Positions 7,645 through 8,205 of a stretch of 12,949 bases of DNA are shown here, one piece after another. Below the pieces are notes generated by a model. It was not told the DNA's origin, did not search any database, and was given only the letters and a program-made list of their open reading frames with translations. Numbering within the stretch: the first letter of the stretch is position 1; each line of letters starts with the position of its first letter. Source of the stretch: Octopus sinensis (taxonomy: Eukaryota); NCBI RefSeq assembly GCF_006345805.1, contig NW_021826360.1, positions 1 to 12,949 on the forward strand, in the 5' to 3' direction. A program made the translations under genes and the position numbers.

Positions 7645-7684
7645 AGAATTTTCTAGAATTTTCTTGAACTTTCTAGAATGTTCT
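7645..7684. promoter_or_regulatory. Heat-shock element (HSF binding site), 8 contiguous alternating nGAAn pentamers
   Basis: aGAAt tTTCt aGAAt tTTCt tGAAc tTTCt aGAAt gTTCt. All 24 core positions are intact, and the three differences between the four 10-mers fall only on n positions. Confidence 0.88.
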
Positions 7685-7701
7685 GACAACATAGATCGCA
7701 G

Positions 7702-7709
7702 TATAAATA
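7702..7709 (+). promoter_or_regulatory. TATA box
   Basis: TATAAATA lies 17 bp downstream of the HSE and starts 32 nt upstream of the Inr A (7734). Confidence 0.8.
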
Positions 7710-7731
7710 CAGGGAATGTAAGCTCAACAGT

Positions 7732-7737
7732 TCAGTT
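7732..7737 (+). promoter_or_regulatory. Initiator (TCAGTT); predicted TSS ~7734
   Basis: Matches the protostome Inr consensus TCAKTY at canonical spacing from the TATA box. Confidence 0.65.
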
Positions 7738-7820
7738 TACTTCGAGCTATTCAGGTGGAGATAAGTTTGAAGAAAGTAAAGTTTGATGGAAATATTGGCC
7801 ATTTTTCATACTTTCCAGGG
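7734..7820 (+). other. Predicted first (leader) exon of a heat-inducible transcript
   Basis: Runs from the Inr to a GG|GTAAGC donor at 7821. Contains one weak-context ATG (7786; MEILAIFHTFQG). Inferred, no transcript data. Confidence 0.5.
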
Positions 7821-8205
7821 GTAAGCAGATAGAAAATAACAGTTGCTACCCAAGGACAAAACTCGTGTTTCACAGTGTTACACTCGTGTTACACAGACTC
7901 TGACTGTTTCAAAATTTCCTTTTTATCATTAGTGTGGTTTAGATCCAGGAGTAAGGAAAAATATTCGAAAAGAAGATGAATTAATTTAATTTAAAATAGA
8001 AAATATCGTTTTTGAACTATTTTAAAACTATTTTATGAGAAAGTGATATGTGTGCGCGTGCGTATGTGTGTGTATGTGGTGTGTGTGTGTGTGAGTGTGG
8101 AGAGAGATAGATAGATAGAGAGAGAGAGAAGGAGAGGAAGAAGAGAGAATAGTATAGGTCTCAAAGAAGAAATCTCATGATGATGATGATGAGGATGATG
8201 ATAAT

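What the first reader, a model, noticed from the sequence alone, without database searches (positions are those of the whole stretch)
7645..7826. Classic heat-shock promoter (8-pentamer HSE + TATA + Inr + donor) inside a repeat-dense region
Seen: eight perfect alternating nGAAn units at -89..-50, TATAAATA at -32, TCAGTT at +1 (7734) and GG|GTAAGC at 7821. The three differences among the four 10-bp units all avoid the GAA/TTC cores. Established: HSF trimers bind alternating nGAAn arrays, and three units suffice. A long contiguous array just upstream of TATA, with a non-coding first exon and an intron, is the layout of Drosophila hsp83/hsp90-type genes. Inference: this is a very strong, functional HSF-driven promoter, and it is invisible to ORF-based annotation.
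Basis: partly seen in the sequence, partly recalled or inferred. Interest (0 to 1): 0.8.

Follow-up and report, generated by a model that had tools for sequence, protein, structure and literature searches.

The report
Heat-shock promoter in an octopus-like genome
A textbook-looking heat-shock gene switch (eight HSF binding units, TATA box, start site) really is there in what is probably an octopus-type genome, but it is an ordinary kind of element and the gene it drives lies outside the window.

Summary
There are eight perfect alternating nGAAn/nTTCn units at 7645-7684, TATAAATA at 7702-7709, TCAGTT with A at 7734, and GTAAGC beginning at 7821. It is the only HSE of three or more units in the 12.9 kb window, even allowing one mismatch. 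A TATA+Inr pair sitting 10-40 bp beside a given site has a chance of about 4e-4. The segment 7320-8045 is single copy within the window and shows no transposon hallmarks.

The best explanation is a genuine HSF-responsive RNA polymerase II promoter of the insect hsp83/hsp40 type, which carries a contiguous 6-9 or 3-7 unit block 30-100 bp upstream of the start site.

Three things are not shown. The splice donor is one of three equally good donor-like sites, and "exon 1" contains an ATG. No coding exon or Pfam domain appears anywhere in the window, so the target gene is unknown. No binding or expression data could be reached.

The host is probably a cephalopod, not an arthropod: a transposase remnant is 79-91% identical in DNA to Octopus bimaculoides. 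The array is partly a 10-bp tandem duplication.

Verdict: a new member of a known kind, of modest interest.

The parts
7645..7684 (+). Heat shock element: eight contiguous perfect alternating nGAAn/nTTCn units (-89..-50). It is also a 10-bp x 4 tandem repeat.
   Evidence: It is the only HSE of 3 or more units in the window. Seven of the eight units carry the preferred flanking base (AGAAn / nTTCT).
7702..7709 (+). TATA box TATAAATA, 17 bp downstream of the last HSE unit, with its T at -32.
   Evidence: One search shows that the TATA+Inr composite is rare (2 in 108 kb of strand sequence).
7732..7738 (+). Initiator TCAGTTT (fits YYANWYY and TCAGTY). The inferred transcription start is A7734.
   Evidence: The start site is inferred from the TATA spacing, not measured.
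7734..7820 (+). Putative first exon or leader (87 nt, 36% G+C, no special structure). It contains a 16-nt direct repeat at 7763-7794.
   Evidence: folding z-score -0.61. The 3' boundary is hypothetical.
7786..7788 (+). The only ATG in the leader, in a poor context (TTTGATGG). It would read MEILAIFHTFQ(G) up to the donor, so it is either an upstream ATG or a real start codon.
7821..7826 (+). Candidate 5' splice site GGG|GTAAGC.
   Evidence: It scores 6/9 to the consensus, with equal candidates at 7755 (CAG|GTGGAG) and 7776 (AAA|GTAAAG). GTAAG occurs at 0.12 per 100 nt on the + strand of the window.

Best explanation
This is a genuine RNA polymerase II heat-shock promoter.

How it would work: under proteotoxic stress, HSF trimers bind cooperatively to the 40-bp block of eight alternating nGAAn units at -89..-50. 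Eight units is room for two to three trimers. From about 17 bp upstream of the TATA box they activate a TATA/Inr core promoter that starts transcription at or near A7734 on the + strand.

The transcript begins with a short AT-rich leader. It is probably spliced, with the donor most likely at 7821, to exons that lie beyond the 3' end of the window, more than 5.1 kb away. The layout is that of insect hsp83 (Hsp90) and hsp40 promoters, so a chaperone or co-chaperone gene is the most likely target.

Shown: the motifs, their spacing, their statistical rarity, single-copy status within the window, and the absence of coding sequence in the window.
Inferred: HSF binding, heat inducibility, the exact start site, the splice, and the identity of the gene.

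Part of the array probably grew by 10-bp tandem duplication in this repeat-prone genome.
For: - Eight perfect units: 0 of 200 shuffles match, and it is the only HSE in 12.9 kb even with a mismatch allowed. None occurs in 41 kb of related DNA.
- TATAAATA and TCAGTT sit at canonical distances. The probability of such a composite beside a given site is about 4e-4.
- All three substitutions avoid the GAA/TTC cores. Seven of eight units have the preferred AGAAn/nTTCT flanks (with PMC2871787 for the preference).
- Published layouts agree. Insect hsp83 carries a contiguous 6-9-unit HSE 30-100 bp upstream of the TSS, and hsp40 carries 3-7 units at 35-100 bp. Genes with such conserved HSEs were heat-induced (PMC4717527). 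The number of consecutive units relates to response magnitude (PMC2871787).
- The segment is not one of the window's repeat families and has no TIR, LTR or TSD.
- An independent animal-like metagenome contig, L002, has the same build: eight perfect units (35/40 identical), TATA, CAACAnTTCAGTTTA, a leader of about 95 nt, then GTGAGT.
Against: - No chaperone or any other coding exon is detectable downstream or upstream in any frame.
- The donor is not distinctive, and the leader contains an ATG, which is unusual for an efficiently translated heat-shock leader.
- The array is formally a 10-bp tandem repeat with two identical leading units, in a genome full of slippage repeats.
- HSE-phased 10-bp repeats also occur elsewhere without a TATA/Inr.
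- No orthologue, transcript or binding evidence could be obtained.
Confidence: 0.7

Rival explanations
1. This is a non-functional slippage product. A 10-bp minisatellite, (AGAATTTTCT)n, happens to have HSE phasing and happens to sit near AT-rich TATA-like and Inr-like sequence. Nothing is transcribed from it.
For: - TRF scores it as period 10 x 4 copies, and the first two units are identical.
- The window has about 90 tandem-repeat calls.
- HSE-phased 10-bp repeats such as (GAAAATTCCA)n exist in other collections with no TATA/Inr.
- No gene is seen in the window.
Against: - A random 10-mer unit has GAA/TTC phasing in only about 0.2% of cases (my calculation).
- TATA and Inr at canonical spacing add a further factor of about 4e-4.
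- The substitutions spare the cores and the flanks fit the extended consensus.
- Slippage origin and function are not mutually exclusive. HSE length varies by small indels in Drosophila (PMC2871787).
Confidence: 0.12
2. The promoter is functional and heat-inducible, but it drives a non-coding or lineage-specific transcript, in the manner of Drosophila hsr-omega, rather than a classical chaperone gene.
For: - No coding potential is seen for 5.1 kb downstream.
- The downstream region is SINE- and microsatellite-rich.
- The first AATAAA after the start is at 9495.
- Genome-wide, most HSF sites in Drosophila are at non-heat-shock genes (title and abstract of PMC3021535).
Against: - Cephalopod introns are long (my knowledge), so a coding exon beyond the window is unremarkable.
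- The proximal 8-unit block plus TATA is the signature of classical hsp genes.
Confidence: 0.1
3. The promoter belongs to a mobile element, such as a solo LTR or other TE fragment carrying its own HSE/TATA/Inr. It is one of many copies in the genome.
For: - The surroundings are repeat-dense: SINE copies, a mariner-like remnant, and a degenerate repeat at 7070-7320 directly upstream.
- TE-borne HSEs are known in other animals and plants (my knowledge).
Against: - 7320-8045 is single copy in the window and absent from 41 kb of cephalopod-like DNA. That sample is far too small to exclude anything but a very high-copy family.
- There are no terminal inverted or long terminal repeats and no target-site duplication.
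- No gag, pol or transposase domain lies downstream.
Confidence: 0.08

Closest known systems
Insect hsp83 (Hsp90) promoters, including Drosophila melanogaster Hsp83
   Same: A single contiguous proximal HSE of 6-9 units lies 30-100 bp upstream of the TSS (PMC4717527). It is conserved near the TSS across Drosophila (PMC2871787). From my knowledge of D. melanogaster Hsp83, there is also a TATA box and a short non-coding leader exon followed by an intron.
   Different: No Hsp90 coding sequence is seen within 5.1 kb. The host is cephalopod-like, not an insect. All eight units are perfect and partly a 10-bp duplication. The leader contains an ATG.
Insect hsp40 / DnaJ-1 promoters
   Same: [quoted passage not shown]
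   Different: The block here is longer. No J-domain exon is seen in the window.
Drosophila hsp70 promoter
   Same: An HSE sits just upstream of a TATA box, with a TCAGT-type initiator. Activation is by cooperative HSF trimer binding (PMC2871787, and my knowledge).
   Different: hsp70 uses several separate 3-4-unit HSEs spread over about 250 bp together with GAGA elements, and the gene is intronless (my knowledge). Here there is one 8-unit block and a likely intron.
Human polyubiquitin C (UBC) promoter
   Same: It is an HSE-bearing stress promoter (PMC4552642), and from my knowledge it has a non-coding first exon and a 5'UTR intron.
   Different: The UBC HSEs lie somewhere within the 916 nt upstream of the TSS that the abstract says were analysed (PMC4552642). 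That they are distal and of mixed activating and repressive architecture is my reading of the title and my own knowledge. No ubiquitin exon is seen here.
Metagenome contig Ga0126331_1020847 (locus L002), an unannotated animal-like promoter
   Same: Eight perfect alternating units (35/40 identical), TATA, the Inr context CAACAnTTCAGTTTA (14/15), a leader of about 95 nt, then a GTGAGT donor.
   Different: It has extra upstream HSEs and a CCAAT box. The HSE-TATA gap is 27 bp, against 17 bp here. There is no alignable similarity outside the motifs, and its gene is also unknown.

Membership tests
HSF-dependent heat-shock promoter | At least three contiguous alternating nGAAn units with intact G/C key positions | tested here: met
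   Eight perfect units at 7645-7684. The criteria are those given in PMC2871787.
HSF-dependent heat-shock promoter | HSE lies within about 400 bp upstream of a core promoter, with the proximal block 30-100 bp from the TSS | tested here: met
   TATAAATA lies 17 bp after the array and TCAGTT 32 bp after the TATA T. This places the array at -89..-50. The TSS is inferred from the motifs, not measured.
HSF-dependent heat-shock promoter | HSF trimers bind the element | not testable with these tools
   Needs EMSA or ChIP.
HSF-dependent heat-shock promoter | Transcription from the site is induced by heat or proteotoxic stress | not testable with these tools
   No transcript data could be reached. Exact-protein look-ups and the ORF homology search all returned nothing.
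HSF-dependent heat-shock promoter | Conservation of the HSE/TATA block at orthologous loci | tested here: inconclusive
   No orthologous locus could be retrieved. The exact 46-mer has 0 hits in metagenome contigs. There are 0 protein-level hits for the flanking ORFs.
hsp83/Hsp90-type gene | Contiguous 6-9-unit proximal HSE | tested here: met
   Eight units at -89..-50, against 6-9 units at 30-100 bp in PMC4717527.
hsp83/Hsp90-type gene | Non-coding exon 1 followed by an intron | tested here: inconclusive
   GGG|GTAAGC at 7821 is one of three 6/9 donor-like sites within 90 nt. The leader holds an ATG at 7786.
hsp83/Hsp90-type gene | Hsp90 coding sequence downstream | tested here: not met
   No Pfam domain of any kind in the three + frames of 7734-12949. 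This holds within the window only, and the gene could lie beyond it.
Transposable-element-borne promoter | Multiple copies, terminal repeats, target-site duplication, or TE genes | tested here: not met
   Single copy in the window. No TIR, LTR or TSD. No TE domains downstream. Genome-wide copy number is not testable here.
Simple 10-bp tandem repeat | Head-to-tail copies of one unit | tested here: met
   TRF reports period 10, 4.0 copies, 83% matches. This describes how the array may have arisen and does not exclude function.

The most novel reading that the evidence does not exclude
The eight-unit array was created or lengthened recently by 10-bp slippage in a microsatellite-prone cephalopod genome. 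That gave birth to, or strongly boosted, a heat-inducible promoter whose product is a non-coding or lineage-specific RNA running into SINE- and repeat-rich DNA. It would be an hsr-omega-like stress transcript outside insects, and an example of a promoter arising by repeat expansion.
Probability: 0.1. Interest if true: 0.6.

Novelty: new member of a known kind. Interest (0 to 1): 0.3.

Why it matters
If confirmed, it would be a compact, strong, stress-inducible promoter from a cephalopod. No heat-shock promoter from that group turned up in the literature searched, and genetic tools there are scarce. It would therefore be a candidate inducible driver for transgenes, and a marker for annotating a stress gene whose first exon ORF-based methods miss.

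It also illustrates how HSE arrays can lengthen by tandem duplication. Conceptually it adds nothing new to the HSF/HSE paradigm.

Tried and rejected
- **Coding exons.** I scanned Pfam with all three + frames of 7734-12949, all three - frames of 1-7700, and the remaining non-low-complexity ORFs. Nothing was found. Rfam and tRNA scans were also empty.
- **Extending the window or finding the same locus.** Exact look-ups of 11 window ORFs found none on record. A concatenated query of 41 unique-region ORFs returned 0 hits among 5.8 billion proteins.
- **Orthologue by DNA.** The exact TATA-to-leader 46-mer had 0 hits in metagenome contigs.
- **Architecture scans.** In metagenome contigs there were 2 hits, one plant-like and one animal-like analogue, neither an orthologue. 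The composite had 0 hits in viral contigs. The bare 8-unit pattern gave 6 loci there, all 10-bp tandem repeats.
- **Literature.** No cephalopod heat-shock promoter paper was found. No text matched sequence strings from the promoter or the SINE.
- **Shrimp origin.** This was my first impression from the microsatellite load. I rejected it because the transposase remnant matches Octopus bimaculoides.
- **Bidirectional promoter.** Rejected. There is no TTTATA within 100 bp on the other side of the array; the nearest is at about 7433. No minus-strand coding sequence was found.
- **Bacterial-type promoter or terminator scan.** Irrelevant, and at shuffle level.
- **Generic HSP90/HSP70 protein search.** I ran no further search on this to fish out octopus loci. 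Cephalopod entries would be buried under thousands of closer hits.

Full report

Yes, to the base. The sequence at 7645-7684 reads AGAAT TTTCT AGAAT TTTCT TGAAC TTTCT AGAAT GTTCT. A script that looks for runs of alternating nGAAn/nTTCn units finds this 8-unit run and no other run of three or more in the 12,949-base window.

- The core pattern, even with three mismatches allowed, matches once, and in none of 200 dinucleotide-preserving shuffles.
- Allowing one core mismatch per three units still gives no second HSE anywhere in the window.
- TATAAATA lies at 7702-7709, 17 bp after the last unit.
- TCAGTT lies at 7732-7737 with A at 7734. This puts the T of the TATA box at -32 and the array at -89..-50.
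- GTAAGC begins at 7821, giving a putative 87-nt first exon.
- The three departures from the 10-bp consensus all fall on 'n' positions. This is only suggestive (0.4^3 = 0.064).
- Seven of the eight units also carry the preferred flanking base (AGAAn, nTTCT), a preference described for Drosophila HSEs (PMC2871787).

**2. Is it more than chance?**

The composite TATAAA-N20-28-TCAGT occurs only twice in 108 kb of strand sequence, taken from the window plus two related loci. In first-order Markov simulations, its probability of starting 10-40 bp from a given site is about 4e-4.

The array itself is a different matter. Tandem Repeats Finder scores it as a 10-bp unit in 4.0 copies, and the first two 10-mers are identical. 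Part of it therefore almost certainly arose by tandem duplication in a genome that is saturated with slippage repeats (about 90 TRF rows).

As a control, I scanned 2.9 million viral contigs for a bare 8-unit array. This returned six loci, all of them 10-bp tandem repeats such as (GAAAATTCCA)n. None matched the TATA+Inr composite. HSE-phased repeats can therefore exist on their own. What singles this one out is the core promoter attached at canonical distances.

**3. What surrounds it?**

The window is eukaryotic, about 35% G+C, and very repeat-rich.

- A Tc1/mariner-like transposase remnant at about 197-989 on the minus strand has its best protein hit in Octopus bimaculoides (54% identity, E = 1.6e-31).
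- That remnant aligns at 79-91% DNA identity to an O. bimaculoides chromosome. The source is therefore most likely a cephalopod, probably an octopod, and not the arthropod that the Drosophila analogy suggests.
- A roughly 215-bp SINE-like element is present in six copies: 4913-5044, 5100-5269, 8207-8420, 8583-8721, 9912-10081 (minus strand) and 12412-12572.
- None of these families covers 7320-8045. That segment is single copy within the window and shows no terminal inverted repeats, long terminal repeats or target-site duplications.

**4. What does it drive?**

Unknown.

- Pfam scans of all three + frames of 7734-12949, all three - frames of 1-7700, and the remaining non-low-complexity ORFs found no domain at all.
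- Rfam and tRNA scans were empty.
- Any coding exon therefore lies more than 5.1 kb downstream, outside the window, or the product is non-coding.
- A bidirectional arrangement is unlikely. There is no TATA on the other side within 100 bp.

The intron claim is the weakest part of the finding.

- GGG|GTAAGC matches the donor consensus at 6 of 9 positions.
- So do CAG|GTGGAG at 7755 and AAA|GTAAAG at 7776.
- Sites of that quality occur at 1.4 per 100 nt on the + strand of the window.
- The leader contains one ATG (7786, poor context). It lies inside the second copy of a 16-nt direct repeat and would read MEILAIFHTFQ(G) up to the 7821 donor.
- The leader has no unusual RNA structure (z = -0.61).

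**5. Attempts to bring in related sequence**

- Eleven window ORFs are not in the protein collection.
- A concatenated query of 41 unique-region ORFs gave no hit among 5.8 billion proteins.
- The exact TATA-to-leader 46-mer is absent from metagenome contigs.

Neither an extension of the locus nor an orthologue could therefore be obtained.

An architecture pattern (six HSE units, TATAAA, TCAGT) hit only two of 241 million metagenome records.

- One looks like a plant small-hsp-type promoter.
- The other, Ga0126331_1020847, is animal-like and strikingly parallel. It has exactly eight perfect units (35/40 identical to the window's), a TATA box, the initiator context CAACAnTTCAGTTTA (14/15), a leader of about 95 nt, and then GTGAGT.

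Outside the motifs the two do not align, so I treat the second contig as an analogue. It shows that this build recurs. I do not treat it as an orthologue.

**6. How it most likely works**

The layout matches the published description of insect hsp83 promoters: a contiguous HSE of 6-9 units 30-100 bp upstream of the TSS. It also matches hsp40 promoters, with 3-7 units at 35-100 bp. Genes with such conserved HSEs were heat-induced (PMC4717527).

In general, each 5-bp unit binds one HSF monomer. Alternating units promote cooperative trimer binding. The number of consecutive units relates to the size of the response (PMC2871787).

I therefore commit to a genuine HSF-responsive TATA/Inr promoter that fires at about 7734 on the + strand, with confidence 0.7. 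Its target, most likely a chaperone or co-chaperone gene, lies beyond the window. Binding, inducibility, the start site, the splice and the gene are all inferences.

The rivals are:
- a non-functional slippage repeat (0.12);
- a functional promoter of a non-coding or lineage-specific RNA (0.10);
- a TE-borne promoter (0.08).

**7. Novelty and verdict**

This is an ordinary kind of element, a heat-shock promoter, in an under-studied lineage. The literature search turned up no cephalopod heat-shock promoter, so it is a new member of a known kind.

Its interpretation is partly supported. The promoter reading is well founded. 'Very strong, functional', the non-coding exon and intron, and the hsp83/hsp90 identity are not established. 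The Drosophila framing is only an analogy.

Interest is modest (0.3).

Noticed in passing
window 87-989 (minus strand): A Tc1/mariner-like transposase pseudogene with an in-frame stop at 542-544. Its best protein hit is Octopus bimaculoides LOC128250757 (54% identity), and it is 79-91% identical in DNA to O. bimaculoides chromosome CM046625.1. A 106-bp piece is duplicated at 87-192 and 717-822 (95% identity). It has no Pfam hit.
   Followed up: partly
window 4913-5044, 5100-5269, 8207-8420, 8583-8721, 9912-10081(-), 12412-12572: Six copies (77-83% identical) of a roughly 215-bp SINE-like element. Four are followed directly by a tandem repeat of a different motif: (AAC/AAT)n, (ATA)27, (TAG)21+(TGA)11, or a 15-bp unit x 19.5. 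It was not found in 41 kb of O. bimaculoides and ENA cephalopod-like DNA. From memory it resembles an abundant octopus SINE, but I could not verify that.
   Followed up: partly
window 1085-1578: A minisatellite with a 68-80-bp unit in about 4-6 copies, built around (TG)n and ACACAACTGAGCTTTG.
   Followed up: no
window 12584-12876: A 15-bp tandem repeat (TCACTCACCACCACA, 19.5 copies, 74% matches). It produces long spurious ORFs on both strands and a weak pentapeptide-repeat Pfam hit.
   Followed up: no
window 7763-7794: A 16-nt direct repeat inside the putative leader (AAGTTTGAAGAAAGTA / AAGTTTGATGGAAATA). The only ATG of the leader lies in the second copy.
   Followed up: partly
window 7861-7896: A short direct repeat, ACTCGTGTTTCACAG / ACTCGTGTTACACAG, 21 bp apart and about 40 bp into the putative intron. 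Its significance is unknown.
   Followed up: no
L002 (Ga0126331_1020847) 840-1110, minus strand: An unannotated animal-like promoter with eight perfect HSE units, two further upstream HSEs, a CCAAT box, TATATAAAAG, TTTCAGTTTA and a GTGAGT donor about 95 nt downstream. This is the same build as the window's element.
   Followed up: partly
L006 3546-3583, L008 1591-1628, L009 5093-5130 (IMG/VR contigs of 339-733 kb): An identical long (GAAAATTCCA)n array, HSE-phased for well over eight units, sits in three large 'viral' contigs. L005 and L010 share a different array, and L007 has its own. It is unclear whether these act as HSEs in a eukaryotic host or giant virus.
   Followed up: no
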